Source: Obrimoposthia wandeli (Eukaryota). From it: a DNA stretch of 64,000 nt. This document shows, piece after piece, positions 33,001 to 58,799 of this stretch; positions within the stretch are counted from its first letter, which is position 1, and every line of letters starts with the position of its first letter. The position numbers and the translations under genes were made by a program. The notes beneath the pieces are model-generated. The model searched no databases. It saw nothing but the letters and a program-made list of their open reading frames with translations, and had not been told where the DNA came from. The DNA lies in assembly GCA_977020255.1 (NCBI GenBank), contig CDROCS010002398.1, positions 1,178,001-1,242,000 on the forward strand. Reading direction: 5' to 3'.

Positions 33001-36000
33001 GCCCCGATTAGCCAGTGTCAATAGCAACAGTGCCGCCACTGCCCAGCAACAGTTGCTAGGCGCCTCCTGGGCGAGTTATAACAGTGCTGCCGCTGCTGCT
33101 CCAACCGCCAGTCGCAGTCAGTCGAGGTAGGCAACTTTCTCTATGCAGGTCAATATATCTAACTAGGTCAAATTCGACAAAGTACTATATTTTTAACATA
33201 TGTTCACCATCATTGGCTCAATATCAAGGTTTCACTAAAATTTCGCAACCTATATTTTCATTTTCGTTTATAAATTGTGAATATATTTTACAATGTCATT
33301 TATGACATTTTGGTGTATAATTAGGTGCGTAAGAAAACTTTGAAACCATGTGCAAAAAGTATATTTTTATAACTCAAATATATGTTAAAATGTTTTTTGT
33401 ATCTTATTTCGTTACATTTATGCATTGATTGGCGTATGAATAATATAATAACAAAGGTATTAAATCTTTAAATCCAGTTAAATTATTCGGAATTCGTTTT
33501 TATCTGTTTAAGTGAAAGCTTTTTTTATTAACAAAATACCTAAACAAAATGATCTGAATGATGACAAAAACGAAAAATTATTCTTTTAGAAAATTTGAAA
33601 GTGCACCGAAATGAAGCAATAATGTAATCATGATTTTTTTAAAGTTATTAGGGAATTATGAATAAATATTTTAAAAACTACAAAAAGATCAAAGTTAGAT
33701 GAAAGAGAACATATAAGGCTGATTTTTTCTATATAATTTTTATTGTTGAAAAACTTTATACTAAATGGGCTAAACCGCTGCCAATACTATAGGAAATGAG
33801 CTAATCATATTGTCCATTTCAAAATTCAACCTTGCTATTGTCACAAACATATGGCCAAAAATATAGCCGATTTTTGGTTTTGAAGCACTAGAAGGTTAAA
33901 CGAAAGTTATCAAATATATTCAATATGATAGAAACATAACTTCTTCAAACTGTTTTCTACAGGTTTCAAATTGAGAAATGGGAAAATATTCATAATTCGT
34001 GAAGTTGTTCGACTCAAAAAAAGATTTTTTTGAAAATTAACTGTTTGAGAAAACTAATTTGAGAAAATTTGTCAGGGATTTTCAAGATTCTTTGAAAACA
34101 TTTTACATTCCTAAGAGGTAAAAAAAAAAAAAGCTGATTTTTCTGCAAATTTTCAGGACATTCATTTGATCGTGAATCTTTGGGGAGTTTTGGCCCGACT
34201 TATTTATGCGAAAATAGAAATACATTAATATCCCTGAGCTAAAGTGTTATACTACTTAAAATAGACCAATCTGAAGAAAGGAATTTTTGAGAATGTTTGA
34301 TTATCTTTTTCTCAATGAAATTTGAGGTTTTTAATTTGATTTTTTATGTTCAAATAACTGGGGTTTTAAAGATTTGTTATACTTTATTTTATACATTATG
34401 CAATTTATCGTAATATTATCAAATAAAATAACTTTAATATTCTATTATTTTCTTCAATATTTTCAGTTTTATACACGATGATTTTATATAGTAATACAAA
34501 TTTAAATGGTAATAAAAGTAAAAAGAAGTTTTTGTTTTAACGTTTCAATTTGTTTCTAGAACATTCTACAGATAGTTTAAATTTATTATAGTCGCTAATA
34601 TTCTATTAGTATGCAAAGAAAGAAATGTAGCGGACGTTTTATATGAAAGATTAACTATTAAAGAATATAAAAACAAAATATCTTCTCTAACAATAATCGT
34701 TTCCACTTACGAGAGCAACAATACATTTAGTATTTAACAAGTTTTTATCAACTGGAAATGTAGGTGATTTGTCTAGATCGGGTTGCTCAGTCTCAAAACT
34801 TACTCTGCAATTTTCTTCCGAATATGTAAGTGGTGAACTGTTTTGAATTGGCTGGTTAGGACTTCAAGTTCAGGCAGTAAATGTTGCACGATTTGGTGTC
34901 AATCGTGAAAATACAATACGAGGTCGGCTGTTGCTACTAGTGGCATAGTTTTTGGTGATGAAGCTTGCACCTCTTCTAATTGGTCCATATTAAAATTAAA
35001 TAATCTCTCTAATTTGTTGTATATTATAATTAATTAACTTTCACTAATTGGCCATTATATAATAATCTTTCTTTAACTGACCGTATTTTACTAAATCTCT
35101 TCTAATTGCACCTTTTGGACATAAAGAAATGCTTTAAATATATCGAAGACCGCTACTCACCTTAGAAGAGACCATGGAGTACGATCCCATGCCAAAGACT
35201 GTTCACCAAGGATCGCATATTAAACCATGACAATAGAATATTCAACTATTCTTGTCAAACTTTGCCTTATATGCAAGATTGACCTAAATTATTTAAAAAA
35301 ACGACTGGAAATACAACTATTTGCTTCGTACTTTGGCGGGTTCTGAAAGACTCGTAGTAAATTTGACCTATATTTTATCAAAATCACTGAAAATCGACCC
35401 AATATCCCCTAACTCGCCTCTAAATTTGCCATGTACTGAAAGACACACGGCAAAATTGACCTGCATTCCATCAGAATCTACCAAATATTACCCAAAATGA
35501 CCGATTTTCACCGAAAAAAACCCAACTATTCGAAGACATTTGATTTACATTCGACAAATACGAGGTCCGTGGCCAAAGCTCTAGGGCTGCCTTTCCCACG
35601 TACTTTGCCTTGTTCTGAAAGGCACACGTTCTTCTACTTGACAAGATCGATTCTTGTTTTTTATTACCGGTTGTGTTGAAAATGCTGTTTCGCAAATGTG
35701 TTGGTCCAAATGGACTTAATATCAAAATAGCAATTTTGGCGATTGAAACATATTTTTGTTGACGTCTTATCCAAACGTTTGTCATTTCTAGATTGCTAAA
35801 CTCCATTTCAAGTGAAGATTCCACTCTTATTTCAAATGGTTCCTCTTGATTTGACCAACTAATGTGGTCATGTTGCAAAGAAGCAAGAAATGGCGTTCCG
35901 ACCCAGTCATACTCTTTGGGTTTCTTTAAATTTTGGAAATAAATGTTTATGAATATTTATATCTGAAATTTGTTTAAGAAACTTATTTTTATTTGAAAGG

Positions 36001-38698
36001 GGAAGTGAAATATTGTTTGATTTTAAAAAATGTTTAAGCATAGAAACATTTCAACGCGTCCTCGTTCAACTCCTTCCGACCATGAAGAAAGCTTCTGTTG
36101 AAATCCTTGATATTTACTAGTCAACATCAAAATGTTTCATATTTACCCCAAGAATTAAATGCACAAAAGAACAATTCGATGAGCTTTTTGTACATTTTGA
36201 AATTAAAATTTGAAATATTTTGTAACGTAAGAAATTGAAAAAGGTTTCTTTGCATTTTAGTTTTCAGTTTAGTTGTTCATTCATTGACTTTGTGAAATCA
36301 ATACGAGATTTTTTCCCCATTATATAACATAGTTATGAAAACAATCAGGTTGTCTCAATGTGGACTATGGCGAAAGCATCGCGATTCTTTTTGAAAAGCT
36401 CAAGTATAAATGATCATTCTTAACTCTCTTCTGGTTGCTTGAAGTGGTTTCTAAATATTTGTGAAGTTTTCTTTGTGAAAATATTCATAGTTGAACAACT
36501 CATACCTGAAATTTGTATATTTAAGTCAAAGAATATAATATACTCGAGATTAAACAAGGTTAATCTAGTTTAAATCAATTAATACTGATTTGCTTACAAC
36601 TAATGTATAAATTTTCAATTTATTGTGAACGACAATAAACTATCAATTACTTTTTATGTAATGGAATATTACAGTAATAACTTACAACATATTAAACTGA
36701 ATATATGCAAAAATATATTATGTTTACAAGTAATTTTTGAATGTCTAGTAAACAAAATTAAATAACTCGAAAGAACTTTTAATATTTGAAAGAATAAACT
36801 TAATAGTAACTTCTGTTTGAAATTTATAGTATATGCAGTCGGTGCAGCTAAGTTTAAAATTTAAAATTAATTTATAGTTTAAAGATAAAATCGCTTGACA
36901 AAATCCACAACCAAAATGCGCTCAAGAAAACTAACATGTAAAATGAAATTTTTGTTGTTTAAAGACATTGAACATCATATTATATTAATTAGATGTAGAA
37001 TAACAAAGAATTAAAGGTTTATTTTGAGGATTAATATTAAAATATCCATTAACATCCCCAATATGTCATACCTCTAACCCTAGTTCATTTACATATATAT
37101 TCGATAATGTTAACTTGTTTTTACTTACTCTTGCTATCACTTAGCACCATTTTAAACCATACTCTCTAATTCATTTATTTACATTGTGATTTACATTCAC
37201 ATTCATTCGTACCTTTCTAACGACTTACTTGTCTATAGTTTTACTTACACTTAGTATTATTTTATTCCTTCCATCAAAATTACAGTTGCTTGCTTTTAAT
37301 ATTGTTGTAACTAGTCATTCTAAGTCTTAATATAATTTAGTATTACTGCTTCTTCCAATCAATCTTACAGTTGCTTACTTGTTATTAATCTAACCATCAC
37401 TTAATCTAACTTTTATTCATACTAAAACTCTATTTTAATTTACTTCTAGTCTAAATTACACTTTCATTCAATCATAGTCTCGATACTCTTATTTCCCATC
37501 TACTTACACTGTTACTCATTCGAAGTTTTACATTCACTTGCTGAAACTCTTACTCATATTTGCATTCCCTTGCATGCATACTTGTATTCATTTACATTCA
37601 TTCTAACTCTCATTTATTCAAACTATAACTCAAATTCTTTAATATTTTTACTAATATTCATTCATTTATGTACTTGAATACATTTGTTCTTGCATTTGTA
37701 TTCATTCATAATTGTATTCGTATTCTTTCTTACTTGTACTTGTAACTGGCCCATTCATTTAAAATATTTCATAAAGGTTGACACGTTGAGACTTTTATGT
37801 TTAATTAAATTTCTGGATTCCGCCCTTTTACCAGTGAGAAAACATGGATATACACTTGATTGAAAATACTATTTAAAATACGTTATGAAATTTTGAAATA
37901 TATTCTTATCAAAGAATATGTTAGATTCGAAAGAAACCATAGGCGCCATTCATTTAAAATATTTCATAAAGGTTGACACGTTGAGACTTTTATGTTTAAT
38001 TAAATTTCTGGATTCCGCCCTTTTACCAGTGAGAAAACATGGATATACACTTGATTGAAAATACTATTTAAAATACGTTATGAAATTTTGAAATATATTC
38101 TTATCAAAGAATATGTTAGATTCGAAAGAAACCATAGGCGCCACGGGTATTTTGAATGACGATTGTGTCTACAATTTAGCACTAACTGATTTTTGTCATA
38201 TTTTATTTCAAATCATGCAGATCGTCAGACCGCAACAATCACCATAGCAATAATCACCATAACAACAATCACCATCACCACAGCCACCACAGTCACCACA
38301 ACCACCATTCCTGTCCCCCTCCCCACACCCGACCCGGATCAGCCTCCACCCCCCCGGCCGCCAATGTTGCCATGGAGACCGTATTTGGTGCGGCAGGGGG
38401 TGCAGTTCCCAATGTTTTTGTGGCACGTCGCGTCAATCTCATCACAAAGGACATCAACGACATCATCAAGGACCTGGTCTTCATCCAGAAGAACAACGAA
38501 AACCGAGAAAAAGTGAACCGGATTGTGTCGGAGTGGCGAGCCGTTGGCATGGTGCTGGACAGATTCTTCTTCATGATTTATGTGATTGCAATTGTACTGT
38601 CACTCATCCACTTTTTCCCGAAAGCTGGAAATGAGACCTACCTCAACAAAAACAAGGAACTCGACTGTGAGTCTGCTGAACATACAAGTACTCCCTGA
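11933..38698 (+). CDS. Cys-loop nicotinic acetylcholine receptor subunit, 3' part (M2-M3-loop-M4), probably of the anion-selective lophotrochozoan clade; six exons
   Basis: Exons 11933-12019, 17235-17353, 26465-27226, 28582-28755, 32939-33126 and 38221-38698 join in phase (1,1,0,0,0,2) with GT-AG ends and no stops. Motifs PMIG-TYYCVNM, PYWLKQ and SEWRAVGMVLDRFF. Confidence 0.9.
12930..13650 (-). pseudogene. Mariner (DD34D) transposase remnant
   Basis: Decayed ISDEKW, LLCVWWNFEGV and PHPSYRSDLAPSDFHLF(RFL) motifs. Confidence 0.75.
14900..15170. repeat. GA/GT-rich minisatellite (GAGGATGATGACGGT/GAGGATGATGGGGT units)
   Basis: Directly visible tandem units; they produce spurious His/Pro/Asp ORFs. 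Confidence 0.9.
17235..17353 (+). CDS. nAChR exon: M3
   Basis: gcag|TYYCVNMTLITLSTFLCLIIVNFHFRGDNRKEAPYWLKQ|gtacat; 119 nt. Confidence 0.9.
18646..18717 (-). pseudogene. tRNA-like relic (Ala-UGC-like anticodon loop) or tRNA-derived SINE head
   Basis: Minus strand: GCCGCCAC-AGTTCAGTGGTAGAAC (A box/D arm), CTTGCAA loop, degenerate TTCAATT B box, TCTCGGC. 72 nt with broken stems. Confidence 0.5.
22620..23020 (+). pseudogene. Chapaev/CMC-type transposase remnant
   Basis: EPLLISQDHLNDLAGYLNLSERQVEINGLRLQEWNLL resembles the ELNDLVRDL.LSK..AELLGSRLQ.WNLL motif; several stops. Confidence 0.6.
25447..25792. mobile_element. hAT-type MITE, 346 bp
   Basis: TIR CAGG(C/G)CCTGT(A/G)AGA; perfect 8-bp TSD CTAACTCA (25439-25446 and 25793-25800). 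Confidence 0.9.
26465..27226 (+). CDS. nAChR exon: start of the intracellular loop (His/Gln/Ser-rich)
   Basis: acag|LTIKHGARILMVDLG...HHMMQ|gtgact; 762 nt, phase 0-0, GC-rich and open. Confidence 0.85.
27305..28400. repeat. 16-bp minisatellite (GATCGAGGTTGTG(C/T)AT)n, roughly 65-70 copies
   Basis: Uninterrupted head-to-tail array with point variants and no unique spacers. Confidence 0.97.
28582..28755 (+). CDS. nAChR exon: intracellular loop
   Basis: ttcag|EDDDDEEDDRRIERDLNYPQL...GQFK|gttact; 174 nt, phase 0-0. Confidence 0.75.
29972..30120 (-). pseudogene. MULE (Mutator-like) transposase C-terminal remnant
   Basis: RLVTVVSDYDNRPILDFLRGIAHNIQM* matches the typical invertebrate MULE C-terminal LRGIAHN motif. 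Confidence 0.55.
30123..31010 (+). mobile_element. Ty3/gypsy 3' remnant: integrase core, polypurine tract and probable start of the 3' LTR
   Basis: VIDRFSK..FGKPKSILTDRG..YQHQANGLEER (rve D,D,E), decayed YKGPYRI, PPT GAAGGGGAAAG at 30819-30829, then TGTAAT at 30833. Confidence 0.75.
31240..31736. mobile_element. hAT/Charlie-type MITE, 497 bp
   Basis: Perfect TIR CAGGGTTTCTCAAC; perfect 8-bp TSD CTCTACAA. Confidence 0.92.
31950..32560 (-). pseudogene. Tc1-like transposase remnant
   Basis: Decayed GGILIWYMLMPNG and MEDNAS (second D motif), plus a degenerate SPD.N.IE region. Confidence 0.5.
32939..33126 (+). CDS. nAChR exon: intracellular loop
   Basis: tcacag|DYEEDLEEFLVECVQSP...SQS-AG|gtaggc; 188 nt, phase 0-2. 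Confidence 0.75.
35630..35880 (-). pseudogene. hAT (Charlie/Buster) transposase C-terminal dimerisation-domain remnant
   Basis: VWIRRQQKYVSIAKIAILILSPFGPTHL resembles FW..YP.L...A...L.PF.STYLCE. Confidence 0.6.
37050..37745. repeat. Degenerate low-complexity CATT/ACTT-rich tract
   Basis: Strongly G-poor run of TTACATTC/ACTTAC-like words. Confidence 0.6.
37751..38143. repeat. Apparently perfect 195-bp tandem duplication
   Basis: CCATTCATTTAAAATATTTC...CATAGGCG starts at 37751 and again at 37946. Confidence 0.92.
38221..38698 (+). CDS. nAChR last exon: end of loop, MA helix, M4 and C-terminal tail
   Basis: atgcag|..ITKDINDIIKDLVFIQKNNENREKVNRIVSEWRAVGMVLDRFFFMIYVIAIVLSLIHFFPK..STP*. Confidence 0.92.
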
Positions 38699-45217: not shown

Positions 45218-48200
45218 GTAAGTGGATAAATACTGATAAACAAAAATATTTCCAAATTAACTGACTGGGAAAACAAACGTCATTCATATTTAACGTTATT
45301 TAAAATATAGTGTAATGTTGGTAAACTGTTAACTTTATTATGCTGAAAATAATCTTATTGATATAAATGATTAATGTACTATATGACATAGTAATATATT
45401 TGAACAAGTATTGTTTTCATATTTCATTTTCAATGTAAATTTTTTATTAAATATTTTATTTTTATGTTAAATTTTTTCTATTTAATTTTTTTTCTAACAA
45501 TTTTAATAAAATGTAATTTATATTTTTGTGAACAATTTTTAAGAAATTATGGACGATCAGAGGAAAAGTTAAGATTTAATTTTACATCAAACATTATTCT
45601 TTCGCCATAGAAATGAATGTCGCCAGGAAGTAGATAGCTGTTATAAAGTCGAAAACTTGCTTCGTAATAGCTCATGTTATGGACTGACAATTCCTTATGC
45701 GAATTCTGTGGAGGCATATCAGGATCAATTGTCGTTAGATCGTTGGCAGCAACTGCAAGCCGTTCCCGGGTGTTGGAGTTACCTCAAGGTTGATTATAGA
45801 TTTTATTAGTAACATATAATGAATAATTTAATTTGACGTGATAAATTGTCTTTCAAAATGATAGCTAAAATGTAAAAAGTCACTCCAGTTAACTAATTTT
45901 GTCTGGGTAAAAAAATACAATGGTTATCCGTTTTATTTGTTTATCAATGGTTACATTAGTAATTTTAATTAAAAATTTTACATTCAGTGGGTATGAATGG
46001 GGACTTGTTTCGGCAGTATCTGTGTTCTTTAAGATCTTTAAGAAACATTTATGAATGTTCTATTTGAGTGTTTGTTTTGTCTATCGTTTCTTTATCACTC
46101 TTGATATACAACAAAATGTATCTAATAGATGATAAGCTCAAGAATATTTTATTCAACCGACCAATGGCAATGTGGAGACAAAATCATTTTAGTAATTTTT
46201 TATGTTTATTAAATTTAAATTAATTAAATTGATTATTATTCCAAAAATCTCTAGAAACAGAATGTCTTAGCCGTTACAATCTAAATGATCCTTTCGGGGA
46301 CATCTAAGTCTAAAGTTTTCGCTCCCGTTTCTGGAGATTTTTGGTATAATAATCAATTTAAATTTAATAAACAGAAAAAATTACTAAAAATGATTTCGTC
46401 TCCACATTACCATTGATCGGTTGAATAAAGTATTCTTGAACTTCTCATCTATTGGGCTGATAAAAAAGTTATTTCGCTTATAGCAAAAGATCATTAGAAC
46501 CTCTCAGTACTTTTATGGAAATAAAACTTTAATTAACCAATAATTTCTGTTGACTTCAATTATGTTCGTCTAATGATGAACTAATTTTACTCCTTGAATA
46601 AATTTATATCCCGTGTGGAGCAGACTCGACACAGTTTTCAGCTTCATAACTCGTGTTTAACTTTAACTGTCCAGTCTTTTGTATAGTCCTAAATAAGTGA
46701 TACTCTTTCTGTGCCATATCAGGATAATATGGCGGATATTTCATTAATTCCCATTCGAATGCTTGAAGATTTTGAACACTTAGCAGCATTATTTTGGTGC
46801 AATAAAATCTTTTTTTCTCTTGGGCTTCTCAGATTTGATCCATTTTTCATCTGATGTTAGTATTCTGTATAACATTCTTCCTCTCTTTCAATCAGCCAAC
46901 AAAATTAACGCACGCGAATACATGATCAATACGGTGTAGTACCCAAGTGCTTAATTTATTTGTCATGCCAATAGATCGATTCAAATTATGCGATAAAAAC
47001 ATTTATACTAACTCAATATTTAACATTGAAAAGTATTTCTGGTTAATTGGGATCGTTACTACTTATGTCCTGGAAATATTGCCCTAATTATTTATCCACA
47101 AGTTATATTTTTCCTGAATAAATGTAACAAGTCTGTCAAAACTATATTCAAATTAAATAGTGTTAGTACAAGTGAACACTTAATCAAGCTCCATTGGCTG
47201 CTGATCCATGTCAGAATTGAATTCAAGATCCTACATATTATCCAAAAATGTATTCTCACTAAGCCGAGATATTTATATGATCTTCTCAAGCCTGGTGTAT
47301 AATATAAATATTTTGGCTTTTGTGAAAGAATACATTTTTGGATAATATGTAGGATCTTGAATTCAATTCTTGCAATAATCCGTAGCCGATGAAGCTTCAT
47401 TAAATGTTCACATGTACTAGCACTTTTCTTTAATTTGAATATAGTTCTGACGGCTTTGTTTAAATGTCCTGCAAGCGATTTAATTGATCAATTGGAATAT
47501 TACACAGTACATTTTATGATTATTCTTAGAGCATATTTTTATATTGGCATATACTATGATCCATAAACATAAAATTGTCTTTGTATAGATATTGCTGTGT
47601 AGTGTGAAGTATCCAGCCTGCTACAAGTCTGGTGGGAACAATGACAAAAAATGGCATATAGTTAGAGTTGCCCAGGATGTGTGTCTCGCAGCTAGGAGGC
47701 ATTGTCCTCATCTGCTACATGGGAATAACAGTGACCCCGATGATAGGCCTGACCTATCTGTTGTTGAGCAGACCCCATTTTTTCTCCAGTGAGTTAAATG
47801 TTTTTATTGGATGATTGATTCTGTTTATGTTGGCTTGCTTCATATGTGTTTTCTGATCATTTAAATAAGTAGATCTCAAAGTGGGCAATATCGCCTCCTT
47901 CAAATAGAAGAGGGTGAAACAACGCATGGAGCCAATCTGAAATATTATTTCAGTTCATTAAGATGTACATTATACTACAAACTAGTAATTGTTCTCCGGT
48001 ATAAAATATACACAGTCACAGCACTTAGAATTATCGAACAATTTATTTACAAATATGATTGGTATCGTCCTGTAAGAATGGGAAATTGTTGAATTGTTCA
48101 CAACACTGCTAATATACTTCTCTCTCAATTAAATTTCCATCCTTTCAATCGCTTGGTAATAGTATTTCGCTTTTATGTTGGCAGTGGCTCACAATGTATG

Positions 48201-51200
48201 ACTCACTTGCAAAATTGCGAACTGTTAATGAAAGTTTTGACGATATGTATCTGGTAAACATTGTTTCCATGAAGATATATTATACTATTTTTCTATTGTC
48301 ACATTTCAGTTATAATCTTCACAAATAAATCGTCCTCCAGATGCGGCCAGTTTGAACCTCATTGTTCAGTCAGTCCCTACAAGAAGCTGATAGAGGCTCA
48401 GACTTCTGTTGCAGCTACTGGAGCCTCGTTATGTCGTTTCCCCATGGTCCTAACTGGTAAATCGTCTCTTTGGTGAGTTTCTTCAATTGCATTCATTGGC
48501 TTCTAACTCATAAATAGCCTTTATCAATTCTTTTTCATTTATGCATATCTTATTTCAATCTTTTGGGTTTTTCTATGACGGAAATTTTGATCTCGTGCAG
48601 GATTAACGGATTTTCTGGATGTGCCTTCTACTGCCTGACACCGTATTTCACTAATGTAGACTACGAATTCTGCCGACTGCTGTTTGGCATCGTTGGACTT
48701 ATCTTCAGCATCGCTAATCTTCTCGCAATTGTAAGTAAGATAATGAGTGACTGATAGTGAGCGATTGAGTGAGTGAGTGAGAAGGAGGGAGAGTGAGTAA
48801 ATAAGTAAGTATTTGAGTGAGTAAGTGAGTTAGTGAGTGAATGACTGTCTGACTAAGAGTGAGTATTGAGATTGTTAGAGTGTGTGAATACATAAATGAG
48901 TGAGTAACTGTCTGACTGAGAATGAGTAAGAGAGTGTGAGTGAGTAAATGAGTTAGTGAGTGAATGACTGACTGACTAAGAGTGAGTGAGTGAGTGAGAA
49001 TGAGGGAATTTGGGAATGAGTAATTATTTGAGTGAGTAATTATTTGAGTGAGTAAGTATTTGAGTGAGTTAGTGAGTGAATGACAGTCTGACTAAGAATG
49101 AGCGAGTAAGTGTGATTGAGGGAGTGAGTTAGTGACTGATAGTGAGTGAGTGAGGTTGAGAGTATGTGAGTGAGTAAATGAGTTAGTGAGTGAATGGCTG
49201 ACTGACTAAGAATGAGCGAGTGAGTGAGAATGAGGGAGTTTGTGAGTGAGTAAGTATTTGAGTGAGTTAGTGAGTGAATGACTGTCTGACTAAGTGAGTT
49301 AGTGAGATTGATGGAGTGTGTGAATACATAAATGAGTGAGTGAGTGACTGAGAGTGAGTAAGAGTGTGTAAGTATGTAAGTGAGCAAGTGAGTGAGTGAG
49401 TGAGTATACGAGTGAATGATTGATTGATTGTCACTTACGTATAGGTTACATTCGTGGGGCATCAGCGTCTGAAAATGGGTGGCTGCAGCAACAGCAGTAC
49501 CAGTAGCAGACTGATAGAGTCGGGACGCTGTCGATGGCACCCCTTGTTGCTGACGCTTTGTGCTAGTCTGGGCTACAGTTTGCTGGGGTCGGTGGGTTGG
49601 GCGGGTCAGCTGTTGCCATCTGTGAGGAGATCCGTGTTGTGTCGAGGGGATGGCGCTCTCAGGGTACGGGAGCCACAGTCCAGGTGGGTAACCTAGAAGG
49701 AGCGGGTGGCACGGACCAGTGGTTGCACACTGACTGCCCACGCATAATACATAGATTGTAAATTAAAATGGCTTTGTATTTAATTATGTAATTATGAAAT
49801 TTAACTTTATAGACCTTTAAATTTTAAATATGACCTTGTTTGTTTAATCTCAATAAATTGCAAATGATCTATTATTGAAATCAGGAAGAAGGAAGCAATG
49901 TAGTAGATCTCAGATTTGTATAAAAAATGTCATGGGTCTAAAAGACATTGTTCATGATTCCTTAAATCGAACCTACACTGTTGAAGCAGTAATTTAATCA
50001 ATAAACTTTTTCCATGAACGAGCCTGAATCCTCGCGTATTTGTTGCACTGCTTAAAGAAGTTGATAGTGAGTACGAAAAATATTTGAGGAGCTGTTTTGA
50101 AACGTTCTTATAAACTTAAGATATCTGAGTTTGAAACAATAGTTGTGTTTTGCAGCATGGACGGATCGATGGCTTGTGTCGTGGTGTTCTGTCTAGTGTA
50201 CCTATCGATTATCTCGGCATCCTCGTCCACGTTGTCCTTCTTCTACATCGTTTGGTCCTCGCTGGCCCGCTACACAGCCGGAGTTTCTGTCGAAAGAAGC
50301 AGCAGTGGTAGCAATCAAGATGACCGGCTTCTCCCGACAGGTATGGAGAGCAGAAATCGCCATCAAGTTCTTTTTAGATAACATTTACCGTGTATTTCGG
50401 TGTATAACTCGGTGTAAATTCAACTGTCCAAGAATTAGATTCAACCATTAAGACAGGGAATTTAAACAGCGCCGATATATATGTATTTGACTGTACTTAC
50501 GTTAATTAGATCCAAAACCTACCCTTGATAACAATTCCGGACATATGGAATTTTGGTTGACAGTTGGAAATAGCTCCGCGAAATAGGAAGGGGTACAAAC
50601 ATAAGGATTCAATAGTGAGTTCTGGTGCAGCTGACGATGGGAGCACCCCAAAAGACGGGCAGCATCGGCTGTGGCGTGGTGTGTTGGCTGACTACTCGCG
50701 AGTTAAGAACCAAACGCTGACGTGTCAGATATTCGTGCTGCTCTTCTCAGTTGCGCTGCTTGTCATCAGCCTCACTGTTGCCGAGGTTATTTGGTTCATT
50801 ATTTCTTCTAGAATAATAATCAAGTAAAAACTGTCTCTGTTATTTAACTGGACAAATTCGTAACATGAACATACCATATGGGCTCCAGCTGAGCTAGTAC
50901 TAGGGTATTTGCTGTGCTTAACAGATCGGTACATTACATTTATGTCTGTTAAAATATTTATTGTTGATTTTACGCTTCATTATTGCAATACTTCTTTCCC
51001 GATAGCCCAGAAGAATGACTCAATCTTGAGCTTCCATCTAATTTTTCATATTGTTTTCATAATAATCGGCTGAGGTTCTTGATGGTATTAATGTTTCCAA
51101 GGCTGGTCCTAAATGTTGATTTCCCCCCTTTTGCGAGGTATGATCTGGAATTTCTTTCCACTTTGTTTCTTACAACATATGAGGCTTTGGTTGATTATGT

Positions 51201-54200
51201 TGTCGCTTAATTTGCTGTAATTTCCCCCCTTTTATCTGTTTATATTATACTCATTCTGCTTTCAAGGGAGCTTTTTCATTTATCTAGTATTTTGTAATTC
51301 CCGAAAGTTTAGCCAACTCCTCGTGAATCTTTTGCTTGGGTACTCAATGGCGTGTTCAATTGCTTCTAGTTCAGTACGCTATAAACATCGTAATCATTTA
51401 TATGGGACTGTAAAATAAGTACTAATTATCCAGGCATATGTAATAAAGAAGCACTCTGGGCCATCCTGGATGTTTTCTATCTAAAAGAGATCAATCTCTG
51501 TACGTGCTCAGTCGAACTTCTTTCAAATTCGTTTTTAGCAGATCTAACTGCAGAAATAGACTTATTACATACTCAATGCCGGACAGCGGTTACTATGCGG
51601 TACTCCACAGTGTAATTACTTTGATCAGCCCTCACAACAAAAATGAAAATACGACGAATTTCATTGCTATACATATATTTATCTTACTGAAATTACAATT
51701 GTTCCAGGTTGTAATAAAGATAAGATCATGCAGAATGTATGTGTTATTAATAAATATTTGTGACAGTCGTGAATTATTAACCGGGCTGCGATTATTAGTG
51801 CTGGCGAACACTGCTTCTGAATGCATGTACATACCCCTACAGATCAAGGCTGATCCGGTCCTGGGGGTATGTTTCATTGCCTCCAGCTCCTTCAAGGCGA
51901 GGGTGTCGCTGTCATTGCTGCCGCTTGGTCTACTTCTGATGCTCATCACCGTTGCTGTCGTCTTCAGTGAGTGAAATGCTGATCAAAGGTTATTGTAGTA
52001 TGGCACAAGTTTTGTTTAATAATGATATTGCGGTGATTTTAAATTTAAGCTTTTCTCTAAAAATCAATTGGCGTTGGTAACTTTACGTCAATATATAACG
52101 ATTAATTCTGTTCACAAAATTAATGAAAGATGTTGAAGACGTCTTTAGTCTCCAAGGTTAACTGAGTCCAGGAACGCTTTAAACAACCTCTTGGAGACCA
52201 TTAGGTTCCTCTTCAAGAAACAACAAATGTAACACAAATACAACAACAATCTATGTCATATTTATTCCCACTGAAACGTTTCCTCGCGTTTTTGGGCTTG
52301 GATTTGAATATGCGTGGTCACGGCTTTAATATCATGTGATTTCTGGTTAGGGGGACATCTAAAGAGAAAAGTTAAAGAAATATGAACAATTTAATTGAAC
52401 TCGCAGAAGCTATAAAATGTGAAGTTTCCTTCATCTTTATGGGAATGGTGTTCTGTGCTGTGAAAACAATTTTCAAGCAAGAATGAGACAGGTTGTATAA
52501 GGTGATCACAAATGAAGCCTCCAGTGACCTCACCAAATAATTTGTAAACTCTAAATTCTAAAAAAGTAAAATATCATTAATATATTTAAATTTATTCATA
52601 TTAATTATTAAATCATTGGGATTCTAACAATTCTGAGGCTGAAGTTCGAAATCATTTGTGAATACAATATTCAAGTATAATTCAATGTTACTCTATTTCA
52701 ATTAATAATGAATAAAAAAGCGACTAAAATATTTCTAAAAAAGAGTTAAAGTACGTAAATGGTGATCATGAAGAACTGCTCTCAGCGCGACAAATCACCT
52801 AGCCTGATGCAGTAACCCTGTTTTTCCAGACAGGTGGACACTGACCATTACTAATCCATATTGCAAGACGTTGTCAAGGCAGCAAACAAGGACGATCAAA
52901 GATAATATGGGAGGAATGCAATTTGTTTAAGCCTGTTATCAACAATTTAAATCGTACACTCTTTTCTGAGAGTTTTGTTAACACAAATATTTTTTACTTG
53001 TCTTTTGTATTCCAGGGAACTTATTTCATATAGATTCAATAACCAGCAGTTAAACCCGGTTAATACAGTCAGGCGACAGTTCCGATTGGTGCGACAACAG
53101 CTGGGGTCGTCGATATCGCTGCCGACTGCGGGAGACTCAAGGCCGGGATGTGCTCGTAACCCACACATTTCTCTCCGGCGGATGAACCGCTGCTGTCGCT
53201 ACTACGGTGAGCTGAACCGACTGACAGTCTTCAGGCAAATACATCAAATACTTATTTAAGAATTTTAGATCAAAAGTTCAACTTATTATATTACCACATA
53301 CATTTACATAAATATGTTACTGACATTTGGTTTTGTTTTTAACTTCGTTTTAAAAATGTGGTTTATTTATAAAATAATTAAATTGTGTTTTAATCAATTG
53401 TAAAATAAATTTGGCACTTTACCTTTCCGAATTACTAAAATTCCATTTAGCTAAAGAAGCTGCAATACTAAACTTTTAAATTTAACATAATTTCTAATGT
53501 TAATCATTTTAATTCGTAAATTAAACCAATCAGATAATTTATACCAATTATTTCATTTTTGGGTGTTTTGACGAAGTTGGTCCGGATATGATCGAGTTGA
53601 TTCAAATAGAGTTCGAACGTAGTTCAATTTTTCAATCAACTGCCAGCGGATTATTCCTCCAGTTTTCGTTTGATTTATGTCCAGTTTCGGAGTTGACATC
53701 GGAAGTCAGTTCCTTTTTGACCCTTTATTCGAGCGATTGCGATTGTCTAACGGCATCCACTTTTTATCGCAATTAATGATATGTTCAAGAAGGATTGATT
53801 TTGTGTCGTTCGAGTAATTCCCTATCGATGTCCGAATTCTTGGCTTTGAGCATGTCTTACTCAAAATTCAGCTTCATCTAAGATCTTTTTGGTGGCAGTA
53901 TGGAGGCACTGGTAATCACGGCGAACATGTCACTTCTTAAGGCTACCGTTGCGATTGTCTTCGATGTTGGTGAGATATTCACGATTTTTTCAACCCTGTT
54001 CGCACCTGTGGAGTGAGTGTCGAAAAATCTACGATTTATTAGTTTGCATTTTACATAGAACTTAAACGATTTACTTATTGATTAACTAAAATGATAAATT
54101 AATAAATTTAAAGGAACACAAAATAAGGTTGCGAATTTTGTTTCATATATTTTTTCGACATACGTTTCCAAATCCTCCCACAAATTTGGTTTCTGAATTG

Positions 54201-54320
54201 ATTATTTACAGGATTCAGCGTGCTGTGTCTATGGATATTCTATGGCTTTTCTGTGTATACGCACGTCTATCTTTATCTCTATGAATCTTCCTGGACCCGT
54301 GGGCTGCGGGATCAAATTAT
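45177..54320 (+). CDS. smo: Smoothened (class F GPCR), divergent; CRD to TM6 reconstructed, TM7 and C-tail unresolved
   Basis: In-phase exons 45177-45217(?), 45611-45788, 47589-47788, 48341-48472, 48601-48730, 49445-49683, 50156-50340, 50616-50785, 51843-51966, 53069-53206, 54212-54320. Matches to human SMO: GSVGWAGQLLPSVRRSVLCRGDGALRVREP vs [39 protein letters not shown] vs [18 protein letters not shown] vs WERSFRDYV. Confidence 0.9.
45611..45788 (+). CDS. smo: smo exon: CRD N-half
   Basis: NECRQEVDSC..SCYGLTIPY..RWQQLQAVPGCWSYLK vs human HCGRAAPC..VCLGSVLPY..LWSGLRNAPRCWAVIQ. Confidence 0.85.
46126..46451. mobile_element. Long-TIR MITE (arms about 130 bp) in a smo intron
   Basis: TAGATGATAAGCTCAAGAATATTTTATTCAACCGACCAATGG... 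is the near reverse complement of 46320-46451. Confidence 0.85.
46450..47016 (-). mobile_element. Deleted mariner element
   Basis: TA-flanked imperfect TIRs (TATTGGGCTGATAAAAAAG / TATTGAGTTAGTATAAATG); WELMKYPPYYPDMAQKEYHLFRTIQ motif. Confidence 0.75.
47092..47520 (-). pseudogene. LINE (L2/CR1-like) ORF2 3' remnant
   Basis: KLHRLRIIARIEFKILHIIQKCILSQKPKYL resembles LHWL...RI.FKIL....K......P.YL. Confidence 0.55.
47589..47788 (+). CDS. smo: smo exon: CRD C-half
   Basis: ILLCSVKYPAC..QDVCLAARRHC..PFFL vs PLLCAVYMPKC..RTLCQATRGPC..PDFL. Confidence 0.85.
48341..48472 (+). CDS. smo: smo exon: CRD end and linker
   Basis: cctccag|CGQFEPHC...LCRFPMVLTGKSSL|gtgagt; phase 2-2. Confidence 0.8.
48601..48730 (+). 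CDS. smo: smo exon: linker and TM1
   Basis: WINGFSGCAFYCLTPYFT vs WYEDVEGCGIQCQNPLFT. Confidence 0.85.
48740..49430. repeat. Degenerate (GAGT)n microsatellite filling a smo intron
   Basis: GTGAGT/GAGT words throughout, with higher-order repeats. Confidence 0.9.
49445..49683 (+). CDS. smo: smo exon: ICL1, TM2, ECL1
   Basis: gtatag|VTFV...GSVGWAGQ..VLCRGDGALRVREPQS|gtgggt. Confidence 0.88.
50156..50340 (+). CDS. smo: smo exon: TM3 and ICL2
   Basis: MACVVVFCLVY vs LSCVIIFVIVY. Confidence 0.85.
50616..50785 (+). CDS. smo: smo exon: ICL2 and TM4
   Basis: Phase 1-0; an alternative in-frame acceptor exists at 50630. Confidence 0.75.
51843..51966 (+). CDS. smo: smo exon: ECL2 and TM5
   Basis: [30 protein letters not shown] vs [30 protein letters not shown]. 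Confidence 0.88.
52270..52520 (+). pseudogene. Tc1/mariner transposase C-terminal remnant
   Basis: ALISCDFWLGGHLKRKV..LIELAEAIKCE resembles DLTPCDFWLWG.LK.KV..L.EL..AI..E. Confidence 0.55.
53069..53206 (+). CDS. smo: smo exon: ICL3
   Basis: Phase 1-1; ends RRMNRCCRYY-G vs KINETMLRL-G. Confidence 0.75.
53560..54030 (-). pseudogene. Mariner transposase remnant
   Basis: LEHIINCDKKWMPLDN resembles LKRIVTGDEKW..YDN; heavily decayed. Confidence 0.55.
54212..54320 (+). CDS. smo: smo exon: TM6 and ECL3 start
   Basis: [35 protein letters not shown] vs [35 protein letters not shown]. Confidence 0.85.
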
Positions 54321-55214
54321 GTGAGTTTTCTCCTACTGGGAAATGAGAGACTGACGATTTTTAGGATGGGATGAATGAATACATAAAATCGTTGTGTAAA
54401 GAATGAAAATAACGAAAAAAGTATAAATTTTTTAGAGGGTAACTTAATTTTATACCAAGGTATTTTGTAGAAAAAACATTTGTCAGCATATATTTCTATT
54501 TGTTGAACCCATAACATTCTCATTAATTTGACACAATCAGTTGTGGAACAAACAGTGCAATACTAAGTACCTGTTTCAATATTTTTGATTTACATTTCAA
54601 TCTTCTTTGGTTCATATATGTTATTTAACATATATTGATAGACCTTATTATTTCGAATACCCCAAAACCAAAAAGTCGCAAGGAATAAGTCTGGTAGTGA
54701 GCAAGCCAGAACCAATCAAATCATTACTCAATTATCTGATTTTTGAATTCCTTTTCTAAAATTCTTCTGGTGTACCTCTATGTATAAGCTTTTATGAGAA
54801 TATAGGCCTAGCAACATTAATGGGAGGTTTTTATGAAGTCCAAATGTAATCTTTAATCGAAGAAAGTTCACAAGTCCATAGAATATCATCCAGCATGTAC
54901 AGTTTCAAACAAGTCACAAAATTCAATTCTAATAATCATCTTCGAATGGCTTATGAATAAAATATGGTTTATATGGTTTAAAATTTCAGAATTGGCTTGC
55001 TATGTTTTTTATTGTATAACTAAATCTGTAGTGACAAGAAGCTTCACGTAGTGACGATCTACCCTTTAAGTTATTTGAGGATTGATGATCCATAGTTTCT
55101 GTAACGTGATTAACAATATCTTCAGATATTACTGAGGCTCTTCCAGGTATTGGTTTAGTGTGGGAGAGAAAAAGCTTTTCAAAACGTTGTATTAATTTAT
55201 TAATTGTAGACTTA

Positions 55215-58037
55215 CTAAAGAATCATTTCTAATACCAACACAACATCATCTATTTTTAGCGGTTCTTTTGCCTCCCACCACTTCTGTCTAACAGCCCACG
55301 TCGGCACTATCTCTTCCATCCATCTCTTCCATAATTGATTTACCAGATTTTGCAACAACTTCCATCTGTGTTTTATATTATTAGTGGTCAGTTCACAATT
55401 CACTGTTCCTTCAGGTATCAGAAAACTATTTGGTGTTAATGAAGTAATTTCCTTACTATCTTGACTCACATAACTCAATGGTCTAGAATTCACAAGATTG
55501 TCAACTTCAATCAGCATAGTATCAAATTCTTCATCCGATAATTCCGCACTTTCCATCACTCTTTTCATCGCCCTCTTTACTGATTTTACCATTATCTCAA
55601 ACACACCACCGAAATGAGGACTACCTGGCGGATTGAAAATCCATCTAATGTCATTTTTTGCTAATTCTGTTTTAAGTGCGTAAGTGTCGAACTTGATTTC
55701 TTCTATTAAATTTGCAGTTCCCACAAAATTCAAACCATTATCTGACAACATCAATGTTGGCCTTCCCCTTCTTCCCATGAACCTTTTAAACGCTCGGATG
55801 AATGCATCAATATCCAAACTATATGCCATCTCCAAATGAACTGCTCGCGTTTGTAGATAAGTAAACAGACAAACATATCTTTTGGCTTTTACTTGCCTCC
55901 GACCTTGTTTTGTCAAAAAAGGTCCTGCAAAGTCAACACCTACTCTTACAAACGCCCTGAGTGGTTCTTCTAATCTGAACTTCGGTAACGGTGCCATCAT
56001 ATTTTGCATATGAGCTGCTTTTGCTTTTTTACAGATTACACATTCCGTTTCAACCTTTTTTATCAATCTTCGAGCTTTCAATATCCAAAATCTTCTTTGT
56101 AGTAAATTTAATATGTGCTGAACTCCAGCGTAGTGAAAATTCCTATCGTGTAAATCTTTCACCACTAATCTTGCGAACCATCCTTCACCTGACAATATCA
56201 CTGAGAATTTGCTATCATAGTTTAAAAACTCAGCGTGAATTAATCTAGAGTTTGTCCTTAATATCCCTTCTTCATCTATAAATGGTCTTAATTTTAAAAT
56301 TTTACTATTTCTCAAAACTTCTCCAGTCTTCATCAAACATTTTATGTCTGTCTGAAAATATTTCAGTTGATCCTCTTTGATCAGTTTTATCATACTAAGT
56401 TCTATTTCTTCAACAATCAATTCTTCTTTAATTCGCACTTCTATTTTATTTTTACAATTATTTATAAATCTATTTACCCAAGCCATTATCCTCTTTATTC
56501 TATTTAGACTAGAATATTTTTCGATTTCTAGTATTTTTTCATGTACTGTTTTTACTTCATATGTAAGTAAAGTACATAATTTCTTTTCTGCATCTTCGAA
56601 TTTCTCAAATTTCTTGTTTACCGGCCACATCTCTCTGGTTTCCTTTAAATATTTTGGCCCTTCCCACCACACTGGTGGAGATGCATTCCTGTACACTTAC
56701 ACCTCTTGACAGAATGTCTGCTGGATTTTTTTTTGTCGGTAAATGTTTCCATTGATTTATATCTGTTGTTTCTTGGATCTTTCCAACTCTATTTGCAACA
56801 AACGGTTTATAATTTCTACCTTGTTGTTTTATCCACCACAACACATTTTCACTGTCTGACCAGAATATTACTTACAACAATCCTTATTCCACGATCTCGC
56901 TATAACTTTTGCTAATTTAATCCCTTCACATACAGCCATCAATTCCAATCTTGGAATACTCACTGTTTTTAACGGTGCAACTTTTGACTTCGCTGATATT
57001 AACACAACTTTTATTTTTCCTTTTTTCCTTGTCCTCAGATATGCCACTGAACCATAAGCTTCTGATGAAGCGTCTACAAAAACGTGAATCTCTTCTTCTT
57101 TATCCGGTTCTATTCCGACCTATCTTGGAATTCGAACTTGATCCAAATCTTTACACTGTGAAATCCACGTCATTATCTCTTTCCTTAAATCTCCTTCTAT
57201 CTTTTCATCCCAACCTAAGCCACTTAACCATACTTTTTGCATCAATATTTTCGCTTTTACAATAAACGGACTCACAAATCCTAAAGGGTCAAATACTGTA
57301 GACAATATACTCAAAAATTCTCGCTTACTAATATTAATCCCATAATCTACTTTAGTTTTAAAGGTAAAATAATCTTCTTGAGGATCCCATTGAATACCTA
57401 ACGTTTTTACTTGACGTGCTTCGTCCTCGATTTGTAATACTTTTGCTTGATCTGATAATGGAATCTGTTTATTTATCTCCTCACTACTCGTTATCCATTT
57501 TTTGGCTTCCATCTTTGCTCCTTTCCATATTTCTTTTACTTTTAACATTGTACTATTCGCTAGATCTTCTGTATCTACTGAGCACAATGTATCATCCATG
57601 TATGTGTTTTCCAAGATCAATCTCGCACTCTCTGGATATTTCTCTTGATATTTTTTAGCATTTTCCCTCGATACCATCTGTGCCAAAAACGGAAATACAT
57701 TTAATCCGAACACTATTCGTTCGTATTCATAGGTTACTATATTTCCTTCTTTATCGTCCCATAAGAAACGCAACCATTTTCGATCTGAATTATTCACTTT
57801 TACTTGTAAATACATTTCTGTAATATCACAAGCTAATGCGATTCTTTTTTCACGAAATTTTAGAAGTATTTCCATCAAATCTCCCTGTAAATTTGGCCCG
57901 CTATCGATAAAATCGTTTAAATATTTTCCACAATCTTTTGCGGCTGCGTCGAAAACTATTCTCACCTTAGTAGTATTTCGATCCCGTTTTACTACTGGGA
58001 AACTATAAGGTGCAATTCTAATTGCAACAACTGTCAT
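55215..58037 (-). mobile_element. BEL/Pao LTR retrotransposon pol (RT, RNase H, integrase), frameshifted and truncated at both ends
   Basis: KVRIVFDAAAK..GPNLQ, YMDD; FVDASSEAYG..AKSKVAPLK..SIPRLEL; NPADILSRG; H-H-C-C zinc finger, GVDFAGP, SDNG, GGVFEIMVKSVK. Confidence 0.95.
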
Positions 58038-58403
58038 TGAATTAAAAGTAATTTAGTCCTCGTAGGGTGACGGTTTAACTTTTTATAATTACGTAGGAAA
58101 TGTCAGATTCATTTAACTTTAGCGAATGAATACACATGGCTAAATAATTACGCCATCTTGATAATCATAATTGGACAGAATTGAAATAGAGTACATCGGT
58201 GAAATATATATCTTGAAAGACGCAGCCCATTTATTTTGTATATGGATGAAGAATTTAGAATAAGATATAGATTTTCCAAAGATGACGAGACGTTAATTCT
58301 TAGCGGGATATAAAATTGACTAAGGTATTGACTAATCCGTTTTGTGGTTGTCTCGCGGCTAGCCTATAGTTTAGTGATCTCGACGATCTCGTGAAGTTGG
58401 TAA

Positions 58404-58771: not shown

Positions 58772-58799
58772 AACAAAACGTTGTTTCTCACCAATTTGC

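What the first reader, a model, noticed from the sequence alone, without database searches (positions are those of the whole stretch)
45611..47788. Smoothened CRD keeps its cysteines but appears to have lost the sterol-binding groove
Against human SMO, the segment from LPY to W109 is 8 residues shorter (15 vs 23), removing the stretch that carries D95. G111 is Gln and Y130 is Lys (gapless alignment around C118, C127 and C134). D95 and Y130 bind the sterol hydroxyl, and a bulky residue at 111 blocks oxysterol binding (established for vertebrate SMO; Drosophila has Phe there). I infer a receptor not regulated by CRD-bound cholesterol, implying rewired or Patched-independent signalling in this lineage.
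Basis: partly seen in the sequence, partly recalled or inferred. Interest (0 to 1): 0.7.

Follow-up and report, generated by a model that had tools for sequence, protein, structure and literature searches.

The report
Flatworm Smoothened with remodelled sterol pocket
These exons encode the outer domain of a flatworm's Smoothened receptor, which is expressed and intact but lacks the cholesterol-gripping residues of vertebrate Smoothened; the planarian Schmidtea shares this state, so it is an old flatworm trait and not evidence that this animal signals without Patched.

Summary
Window 45611-47788 carries two exons of a Smoothened (Smo) gene. The Tyr85-to-Trp109 segment has 15 residues, against 23 in 16 of 18 other animal Smo proteins. 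Gly111 is Gln and Tyr130 is Lys. All 13 extracellular cysteines are kept.

Spliced cDNA-like contigs from the same sample confirm seven splice junctions directly and an eighth through a loose end. My 11-exon model has 564 codons and no stop, so the gene is expressed and not decaying.

- The same derived state (14-residue segment, Lys130, Ala111, Trp163 to Thr, an insertion before the WPxF loop) is in Schmidtea mediterranea Smo, the nearest relative found. It is a flatworm trait, not specific to this genome.
- Sterol-site residues are lost at the same rate (4 of 9 kept) as other conserved cysteine-rich domain (CRD) residues (11 of 25 kept). This is general fast divergence, not a targeted loss.
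- Arthropod Smo also lacks Asp95 and has Phe at 130. The Drosophila CRD does not bind oxysterol, yet as I recall (not read here) Drosophila Smo is Patched-regulated.
- "D95 removed" depends on where the gap is placed. An Asn sits 14 residues before the Trp.

No model of the window's own CRD could be made. The scan had one related note on this window (s1-247242).

The parts
45464..45567 (+). Exon E0: start codon and signal peptide (MLNFFYLIFFLTILIKCNLYFC...), ending in phase 2
   Evidence: ORF beginning with ATG. A spliced contig of run X3 begins at 45529 and joins 45567 to 45611 with GT..AG ends.
45568..45610 (+). Mini-intron of 43 nt
   Evidence: Joint 'skips 43, GT..AG' in run X3.
45611..45788 (+). 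Exon E1: first part of the CRD. Holds C64, C70, C78 and C118 equivalents, the shortened IPY-to-W segment, Trp109 (45744-45746) and Gln at the G111 position (45750-45752).
   Evidence: Sequence; tblastn to Schmidtea Smo residues 40-99; HMMER alignment to the Xenopus Smo CRD; both junctions read-confirmed.
45789..47588 (+). Intron 1800 nt long, holding a very high-copy repeat at about 47000-47600
   Evidence: Joint 45788|47589 in X3. Contig depth of 22,000-37,000 against about 47 elsewhere in DNA run X1.
47589..47788 (+). Exon E2: C127, Lys at the Y130 position (47607-47609), C134, C147, C154, a flatworm-specific insertion (GNNSDPDDRPDLSVVEQ) and TPFFL in place of WPDFL
   Evidence: Pfam Fz domain, E = 0.0012; tblastn to Schmidtea residues 99-169; joints 45788|47589 and 47788|48341.
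48341..48472 (+). Exon E3: end of the CRD and the linker (C169, C178, C193 equivalents)
   Evidence: Joints in X3; alignment.
48601..48730 (+). Exon E4: linker cysteines C213 and C217, and TM1
   Evidence: tblastn at 44% identity to Schmidtea residues 206-250; joints.
49445..49683 (+). Exon E5: intracellular loop 1 with an insertion, TM2, and the extracellular loop 1 motif CRGDGALRVREP
   Evidence: PDB search hits only Smoothened chains (E = 1e-5) and no Frizzled; joints.
50156..50340 (+). Exon E6: TM3 and the start of a long intracellular loop 2
   Evidence: tblastn; joints 49683|50156 and 50340|50631.
50631..50785 (+). Exon E7: rest of intracellular loop 2 and TM4
   Evidence: tblastn; joint 50340|50631. 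The loose end behind 50785 reads the first bases of E8.
51843..51966 (+). Exon E8: extracellular loop 2 and TM5. Ser at the Y394 position; R400 kept.
   Evidence: Pfam Frizzled, E = 1.2e-4; the loose end at 50785 matches 51843 onward; alignment.
53069..53206 (+). Exon E9: intracellular loop 3. The acceptor was chosen by reading frame and homology and is not read-confirmed.
   Evidence: This is the only AG in 53010-53080 that restores the frame from the strong donor at 51967. It gives ...VVF-I-RRQFRLVRQQL, which matches Schmidtea GHLKLIQKHL.
54212..54320 (+). Exon E10: TM6 (GFSVLCLWIFYGFSVYTHVYLYLYESSWTRGLRDQI). The R451 (6.32) position is Tyr.
   Evidence: tblastn at 44% identity to Schmidtea residues 531-566; alignment.

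Best explanation
The finding covers the first two CRD exons of the single Smoothened ortholog of a flatworm. The nearest relative found is Schmidtea mediterranea Smo.

Shown:
- The gene is transcribed and spliced as modelled, and is open through at least 11 exons.
- Its outer domain keeps the Frizzled/Smo CRD fold scaffold: all 13 cysteines, and part of the hydrophobic groove (W109, L112, V157 as Leu, P164, F166).
- The vertebrate clamp on the sterol hydroxyl is gone. The loop that carries D95 is cut by 8 residues and Y130 is Lys. The pocket walls are also changed: L108 to Arg, G111 to Gln, I156 to His, W163 to Thr, and an insertion before the WPxF loop.
- The same state is found in Schmidtea.

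Inferred:
- The change arose in a common flatworm ancestor, as part of a very fast overall divergence of Smo in a sterol-auxotrophic lineage.
- The CRD probably does not hold cholesterol in the vertebrate way.
- Patched still controls Smo, as in Drosophila, whose CRD also fails to bind oxysterol. Control would act through another site or another lipid.
For: Identity as Smo:
- E5 hits only SMO chains in the PDB.
- The big protein search gives Schmidtea Smoothened-like D2ILS1 as the only full-length relative.
- That protein scores 1e-38 against SMO and 3e-9 against Frizzled-6.
- Window and Schmidtea are sisters with 100/100 support.

Expression and integrity:
- Run X3 has spliced contigs across seven GT..AG junctions, plus an eighth seen through a loose end, and a 3978-nt contig.
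- The model has 564 codons without a stop, and all modelled splice sites are GT..AG.

Residues:
- Site table, cysteines, spacing of 15 and 14 against 23.

General rather than targeted loss:
- 11 of 25 conserved non-Cys CRD columns are kept, against 4 of 9 sterol-site columns.

Fold:
- The AlphaFold model of the Schmidtea CRD has pLDDT 80. Its helix alpha-1 is 9 residues long, against 16 in a primate control.
- Its best structural matches are SMO CRDs, ahead of Frizzled CRDs.

Precedent and context:
- The Drosophila Smo CRD does not bind 20(S)-OHC, and 5 of 8 key residues differ (PMC3809587).
- The transmembrane site may dominate in insects (PMC9166294).
- Arthropods in my alignment have L, E or K at 95 and F at 130.
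- Flatworms are sterol auxotrophs (PMC12362056, PMC11391042).
- Planarian ptc knock-down raises Hh signalling, and Smed-smo is expressed (PMC5153250).
Against: - No binding data exist and no structural model of the window's own CRD was made.
- Asn (14 residues before the Trp) or Glu (11 before it), together with Lys130, could still hydrogen-bond a sterol hydroxyl.
- In Schmidtea the hydrophobic groove residues are all still hydrophobic (Y, W, V, I, L, P, F), so some lipid may still bind.
- The transmembrane-site tyrosine (Y394) is also changed (Ser here, Thr in Schmidtea), so the 'other site' is not obviously intact either.
- The planarian ptc-smo epistasis rests on my recall of Rink 2009. I could not read that paper here.
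- Only two flatworm lineages were sampled.
- TM7 and the C-terminal tail were not found in the window.
Confidence: 0.62

Rival explanations
1. One reading: because the CRD cannot hold cholesterol, Smo in this lineage is no longer controlled by Patched, and Hedgehog signalling is rewired or Patched-independent.
For: - D95 and Y130 equivalents are absent.
- In mouse, D99A/Y134F strongly reduces the Shh response (PMC9166294).
- The transmembrane Y394 and the class-F switch residue R451 are also changed in both flatworms, so several known control points differ.
Against: - The same CRD is in Schmidtea, where ptc acts as a negative regulator of Hh signalling and smo is treated as part of the pathway (PMC5153250; Rink 2009 from recall).
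- Drosophila shows that a CRD without oxysterol binding coexists with Patched control (binding data; Patched control from my own knowledge, not read here).
- No hh, ptc or gli search of this genome was possible.
Confidence: 0.1
2. The CRD still binds a sterol, but in a changed pose. Asn or Glu of ANSVE replaces D95 and the Lys130 amine replaces the Tyr hydroxyl, so CRD-sterol regulation is kept.
For: - A gapless count back from the Trp puts Asn at the D95 position.
- W109, L112, P164 and F166 are kept and V157 is Leu.
- The CRD fold is kept in the Schmidtea model.
Against: - Even the conservative Y134F change abolishes 20(S)-OHC binding in mouse.
- The D95 loop is 8 to 9 residues shorter.
- Arg at 108 and His at 156 put charge into the groove of the window protein.
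- Schmidtea has no Asn, Asp or Glu at the matching place (M/Y), so no replacement residue is conserved between the two flatworms.
Confidence: 0.15
3. The copy is a decaying or non-functional Smo gene, and the CRD changes are neutral decay.
For: - The branch is very long: 1.9 changes per site on the tip and 5.0 on the flatworm stem.
- No TM7 exon was found in the window.
- Transposable elements sit in the introns.
Against: - The 564 codons have no stop and all modelled splice sites are canonical.
- Spliced transcripts exist, and one contig runs about 2.7 kb past E10.
- All 13 cysteines are kept.
- The block ILLCS(V/L)KYP and other motifs are shared with Schmidtea despite only 34% CRD identity.
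Confidence: 0.03

Closest known systems
Schmidtea mediterranea Smoothened-like protein (Smed-smo, UniProt D2ILS1; P0003)
   Same: - Same exon-colinear architecture.
- Short Y85-to-W109 segment (14 against 15 residues).
- Lys at 130, a non-Gly residue at 111, Thr at 163, an insertion before TP(S/F)FL, Thr at 219, Ser/Thr at 394, and no Arg at 451.
- All cysteines kept.
   Different: - Only 34% identity in the CRD and 35% over C64-490.
- The short segment itself cannot be aligned between the two (MYTFPNTNFLDINY against ANSVEAYQDQLSLDR).
- The window has Arg108, Gln111 and His156 where Schmidtea has Tyr, Ala and Ile.
Drosophila Smoothened CRD (PDB 2MAH)
   Same: It is a Smo CRD with an intact disulfide scaffold that does not bind 20(S)-hydroxycholesterol. 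The Y130 hydroxyl is lost and other pocket residues differ (PMC3809587). In the arthropods I aligned, D95 is not conserved.
   Different: - Arthropods keep the 22- to 23-residue loop, W163 and the overall CRD sequence (72-88% of conserved columns, against 44% here).
- Position 130 is Phe, not Lys.
- No Drosophila sequence was in my alignment. The Drosophila residues are taken from the paper.
Vertebrate SMO CRD with bound cholesterol (PDB 5L7D, 6D35, 5KZV)
   Same: The fold and cysteine pattern are the same. These are the best structural matches of the Schmidtea model. W109, L112, P164 and F166 are kept.
   Different: D95, Y130, G111, L108, I156, G162 and W163 are all changed, the loop is 8 residues shorter, and there is an insertion of 9 residues in the window (23 in Schmidtea) against the primate row.
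Frizzled CRD lipid groove (for example PDB 5URV, 5UWG)
   Same: The CRD fold is related and has a hydrophobic groove that binds an acyl chain rather than a sterol. This is a possible analogy if the flatworm CRD binds another lipid.
   Different: Frizzled CRDs are weaker structural matches (E about 5e-3 or worse, against 2e-8 for SMO). The gene is Smo by sequence.

Membership tests
Smoothened (class F receptor) | N-terminal signal peptide followed by a Fz-type CRD with 10 conserved cysteines | tested here: met
   E0 encodes a hydrophobic leader. All 10 CRD cysteine columns are Cys. Pfam Fz matches E2 with E = 0.0012, below the curated cut-off because only one exon could be scanned.
Smoothened (class F receptor) | Linker domain with three cysteines (human C193, C213, C217) between the CRD and TM1 | tested here: met
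   All three columns are Cys in the window and in Schmidtea.
Smoothened (class F receptor) | Closer to SMO than to Frizzled in sequence | tested here: met
   E5 hits 13 SMO sequences and no Frizzled. The sister protein P0003 scores 1e-38 against SMO and 3e-9 against FZD6. The tree alone cannot place the long flatworm stem relative to the Frizzled-like outgroup.
Smoothened (class F receptor) | Complete seven-helix bundle | tested here: inconclusive
   TM1 to TM6 were found in E4-E10. No TM7 exon lies in 54321-64000 on the + strand. The cDNA contig continues about 2.7 kb past E10, so TM7 probably lies beyond the window.
Smoothened (class F receptor) | Conserved switch residue R6.32 (human R451) | tested here: not met
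   Tyr in the window and Phe in Schmidtea, against Arg in all 18 other Smo proteins. The window has an Arg one position earlier.
Vertebrate-type sterol-binding Smo CRD | Asp95 on the loop before helix alpha-1, hydrogen-bonding the sterol 3-hydroxyl | tested here: not met
   The loop is 8 residues shorter. MAFFT leaves a gap at 95. A gapless count gives Asn, and no Asp is at that place.
Vertebrate-type sterol-binding Smo CRD | Tyr130 hydroxyl in the same hydrogen-bond network | tested here: not met
   Lys (codon 47607-47609), in a gapless register C127-S-V-K-Y-P-A-C134.
Vertebrate-type sterol-binding Smo CRD | Small residue at 111 and Gly162, leaving room for the iso-octyl chain | tested here: not met
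   Gln at 111 and Gln at 162. Position 111 also varies in Lineus (Ala) and Sinanodonta (Leu), so this feature is a weak criterion.
Vertebrate-type sterol-binding Smo CRD | Hydrophobic groove made of L108, W109, L112, I156, V157, P164, F166 | tested here: inconclusive
   W109, L112, P164 and F166 are kept and V157 is Leu. L108 is Arg and I156 is His. In Schmidtea all seven positions stay hydrophobic.
Vertebrate-type sterol-binding Smo CRD | Measured binding of cholesterol or 20(S)-OHC | not testable with these tools
   This needs purified protein.

The most novel reading that the evidence does not exclude
Flatworm Smoothened may have lost both known sterol-hydroxyl contacts (D95 and Y130 in the CRD, Y394 in the helix bundle) and the class-F R6.32 switch, yet still work downstream of Patched. 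In that case its CRD would have been re-tooled for a different, possibly anionic, lipid. The hints are a Lys at 130 conserved between two lineages that share only 34% CRD identity, plus Arg108 and His156 here and Lys162 in Schmidtea. If true, Patched would control Smo in flatworms through a second messenger other than CRD-bound or Y394-bound cholesterol.
Probability: 0.2. Interest if true: 0.7.

Novelty: new variant of a known kind. Interest (0 to 1): 0.42.

Why it matters
How Patched controls Smoothened is still debated, and the sterol site in the CRD is the leading candidate in vertebrates. Molluscs, brachiopods, a nemertean, a sea urchin and vertebrates all keep D95, W109, Y130, I156, V157, W163, P164 and F166. 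The site is therefore ancestral to bilaterians. Arthropods and flatworms have each lost its polar clamp, and both are sterol auxotrophs.

Flatworms would be a second, independent and more radical natural experiment than Drosophila. Planarians can be studied by RNAi, so the question of which Smo site Patched acts on when the CRD clamp is absent becomes testable. In the papers I could search, I found none that describes this state of flatworm Smo.

Tried and rejected
- **Exon-by-exon searches.** Single CRD exons are too divergent for PDB or Pfam. E1 gave only E = 1.5 to the Xenopus Smo CRD. E2 gave no PDB hit and Pfam Fz at E = 0.0012.
- **Big protein search with E5.** It gave 7 hits, of which only Schmidtea Smo is a real full-length relative. 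The window's own protein is not in the libraries.
- **Word searches.**
  - P0003 found only a mollusc Smo.
  - P0003:36-330 found nothing, so no third flatworm sequence was obtained.
  - P0008 gave the 88 Smo proteins used for comparison.
- **Aligning single exons to full-length P0003 (A1).** The fragments scattered across the alignment, so I dropped it.
- **Tree with a Frizzled-like outgroup.** The flatworm stem is as long as the outgroup branch, so the tree does not decide orthology. Orthology rests.
- **First E9 acceptor (53016).** It broke the reading frame. I replaced it with 53069.
- **TM7 exon search in 54321-64000.** Only low-complexity hits inside a retroelement.
- **Pseudogene reading.** Rejected on the evidence.
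- **Papers not held.** Rink 2009, Yazawa 2009 and De Robertis 2010 could not be read.
- **Earlier-notes search.** No notes on hh, ptc, gli or sufu.
- **Joined model.** The spliced CRD of the window has no single reference. I built it only inside scripts for local alignment and sent it to no search or folding tool. An AlphaFold model and pocket analysis of the window's own CRD were therefore left out. The Schmidtea CRD was folded as a stand-in.
Full report
**What is at the coordinates.** The window is AT-rich (about 25-35% G+C) with GC-richer exons.

On the + strand, 45611-45788 and 47589-47788 are two exons. The first reads ...CYGLTIPYANSVEAYQDQLSLDRWQQLQAVPGCWSYLK and the second ILLCSVKYPACYK.... 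Taken alone they are barely recognisable:
- E1 gives E = 1.5 to the Xenopus Smoothened CRD.
- E2 gives Pfam Fz at E = 0.0012.

Downstream exons settle the identity. E5 (49445-49683) hits 13 Smoothened sequences in the PDB and no Frizzled.

**Gene model and expression.** I built the model by hand from splice signals and by tblastn with the nearest relative.

One run from the same sample as the DNA runs (X3, kind not on record) holds contigs in which introns are cleanly removed at GT..AG:
- 45567|45611, a 43-nt intron. This places the start codon and signal peptide in an exon at 45464-45567.
- 45788|47589, 47788|48341, 48472|48601, 48730|49445, 49683|50156 and 50340|50631.
- A loose end behind 50785 reads the start of E8 at 51843.

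One of these contigs is 3978 nt long and runs 3146 nt past E7.

The E8/E9 junction is not read-confirmed. The acceptor at 53068/53069 is the only AG in 53010-53080 that keeps the frame, and it gives a sequence that matches Schmidtea. The 11 exons give 564 codons with no stop, and all modelled splice sites are GT..AG. The gene is therefore expressed and open. The whole LPY-to-C118 stretch lies within one exon, so the short segment is not a modelling artefact.

**Checking the observation.** Human numbering comes from P0084, the 5L7D construct. That its index plus 31 gives the human number is my recall of the construct start, and it puts D of LLAGD at 95. Results:
- Between Tyr85 and Trp109 there are 23 residues in 16 of 18 non-flatworm Smo proteins (vertebrates, sea urchin, brachiopods, nemertean, molluscs, hymenopterans). 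There are 22 in two crustaceans, 29 in Octopus, 15 in the window and 14 in Schmidtea.
- Position 111 is Gln and position 130 is Lys, in a gapless register around C118, C127 and C134 (HMMER).
- All 13 extracellular cysteines are kept.

1. "The deletion removes D95" depends on the alignment. MAFFT puts a gap there. Counting back from the Trp puts Asn (of ANS) at position 95, with Glu three residues on.
2. Drosophila does not have Phe at 111. It has Ala132 there, and its Phe residues are at the Y130 and G162 positions (PMC3809587).

**Relatives.** The big search with E5 returned one real full-length relative: Schmidtea mediterranea Smoothened-like protein D2ILS1 (P0003), at 44% identity over the exon.
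- It scores 1e-38 against SMO structures and 3e-9 against Frizzled-6.
- Window and Schmidtea are sisters (100/100), on a stem of about 5 changes per site.
- CRD identity between them is only 34%.

Even so, they share every unusual feature: the short segment, Lys130, a non-Gly residue at 111, Thr for Trp163, an insertion before TP(S/F)FL, Thr219, Ser/Thr at 394, and loss of Arg451. The state is therefore older than the split of these two lineages. I take the window organism to be a flatworm on this basis; its name is coded in the tools. No third flatworm sequence could be found. A 2026 preprint reports Smo as a single ortholog in most flatworms, missing in Stenostomum and M. cliftonense.

**Is the sterol site specially hit?** I took columns at least 90% conserved among 14 deuterostome and non-flatworm spiralian Smo CRDs.
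- The window keeps 11 of 25 non-Cys residues (44%) and Schmidtea keeps 12 of 25 (48%).
- Arthropods keep 72-88%.
- Of the nine such columns that belong to the sterol site, the window keeps four: W109, L112, P164 and F166. That is the same rate.

The loss therefore looks like part of a general, very fast divergence of everything except the disulfide scaffold, not a targeted removal. Some changes are radical (Tyr to Lys, Leu108 to Arg, Ile156 to His). The ILLCS(V/L)KYP block is conserved between the two flatworms, which suggests Lys130 is itself under constraint.

**Structure.** The joined CRD of the window has no single reference, so it was not folded. That step is left out. As a stand-in I folded Schmidtea residues 36-225 with an alignment of 22 rows.
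- Mean pLDDT was 80 and pTM 0.67.
- The best matches are human SMO (5L7D, E = 2e-8) and isolated Smo CRDs (TM-score 0.72-0.74), ahead of Frizzled CRDs.
- Helix alpha-1 is 9 residues long and starts 3 residues before the Trp.
- In a primate control folded the same way it is 16 residues long and starts 10 residues before the Trp, with D95 four residues upstream of the helix.

The fold is kept, but the part that carries D95 is rebuilt. The tools give no coordinates, so no pocket analysis was possible.

**What it means for signalling.**
- D95 and Y130 hydrogen-bond the cholesterol hydroxyl, and G111 abuts its tail (PMC5123864).
- Mouse Y134F abolishes 20(S)-OHC binding. G115F does too but leaves the Shh response intact (PMC3809587).
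- D99A, and more so D99A/Y134F, reduce the Shh response. D99A/Y398F abolishes it (PMC9166294).

A vertebrate-style sterol clamp in this CRD is therefore unlikely. The step to Patched independence does not follow, for three reasons:
1. The Drosophila Smo CRD does not bind oxysterol and differs at 5 of 8 key residues. My arthropod sequences have L, E or K at 95 and F at 130. That Drosophila Smo is nonetheless Patched-regulated is my own knowledge and was not read here. Kinnebrew 2022 suggests the transmembrane site may be the regulated one in insects.
2. Schmidtea has the same CRD. There ptc knock-down raises Hh signalling, and Smed-smo is expressed with ptc and gli-1 (PMC5153250). My recollection of Rink 2009 and Yazawa 2009 is that smo knock-down resembles hh knock-down. 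I could not read those papers here.
3. Flatworms, like insects, are sterol auxotrophs. This offers a simple reason for relaxed constraint on a cholesterol sensor.

One caution cuts the other way. The transmembrane tyrosine Y394 is Ser/Thr and R451 is Tyr/Phe in the flatworms. The alternative site is therefore not obviously intact, which leaves room for a truly different mode of control.

**Verdict.** The molecular reading (no vertebrate-type sterol clamp) is likely. The pathway-level inference is not supported. The feature is a flatworm-wide derived state of a known gene, with a precedent in Drosophila. It is of moderate interest as a second, independent natural loss of the CRD sterol clamp.

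Noticed in passing
window 45568-45610: A 43-nt intron with GT..AG ends separates the signal-peptide exon from the first CRD exon. It is confirmed by a spliced contig. It contains a stop codon in the exon's reading frame and, at 43 nt, would also shift the frame if retained.
   Followed up: yes
window about 47000-47600 (inside the E1/E2 intron): A very high-copy repeat. Summed contig depth is 22,000-37,000 in DNA run X1, against about 47 for flanking sequence, with many contigs breaking at 47208-47212 and 47445-47465. It is probably an abundant short mobile element.
   Followed up: partly
window about 48740-49440 (E4/E5 intron): A long GAGT/GTGA-type simple repeat that reads as SLTH repeats on the minus strand. 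The DNA contigs disagree with the window here (a 24-nt deletion and several substitutions near 49007-49039), so the assembly is uncertain in this stretch.
   Followed up: partly
window 55215-58037, minus strand: A Pao/BEL-type retrotransposon in the intron after E10, seen as two minus-strand ORFs (55215-56696 and 57120-58037). Pfam finds reverse transcriptase, Pao peptidase, integrase zinc-binding domain and DUF5641.
   Followed up: yes
window 53069-54320 (E9-E10) and beyond: The class-F switch residue R6.32 (human R451) is Tyr here and Phe in Schmidtea, but Arg in all 18 other Smo proteins. No TM7 exon was found up to 64000, although the cDNA contig continues about 2.7 kb past E10. This bears on the scan's other note on this window (s1-247242): the loss of R6.32 is shared with Schmidtea, and TM7 probably lies beyond the window.
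   Followed up: partly
window 38186-38695, + strand: The last exon of a Cys-loop neurotransmitter-gated channel (Pfam Neur_chan_memb, E = 3e-8), preceded by a His/Asn-rich low-complexity stretch. It is the upstream neighbour of the Smo gene.
   Followed up: partly
alignment of Smo orthologs: Outside arthropods and flatworms, the CRD sterol-site residues D95, W109, Y130, I156, V157, W163, P164 and F166 are invariant in the 14 deuterostome, brachiopod, nemertean and mollusc Smo proteins sampled. Many of these have N-D-S at 94-96, which is a possible glycosylation sequon overlapping D95.
   Followed up: no
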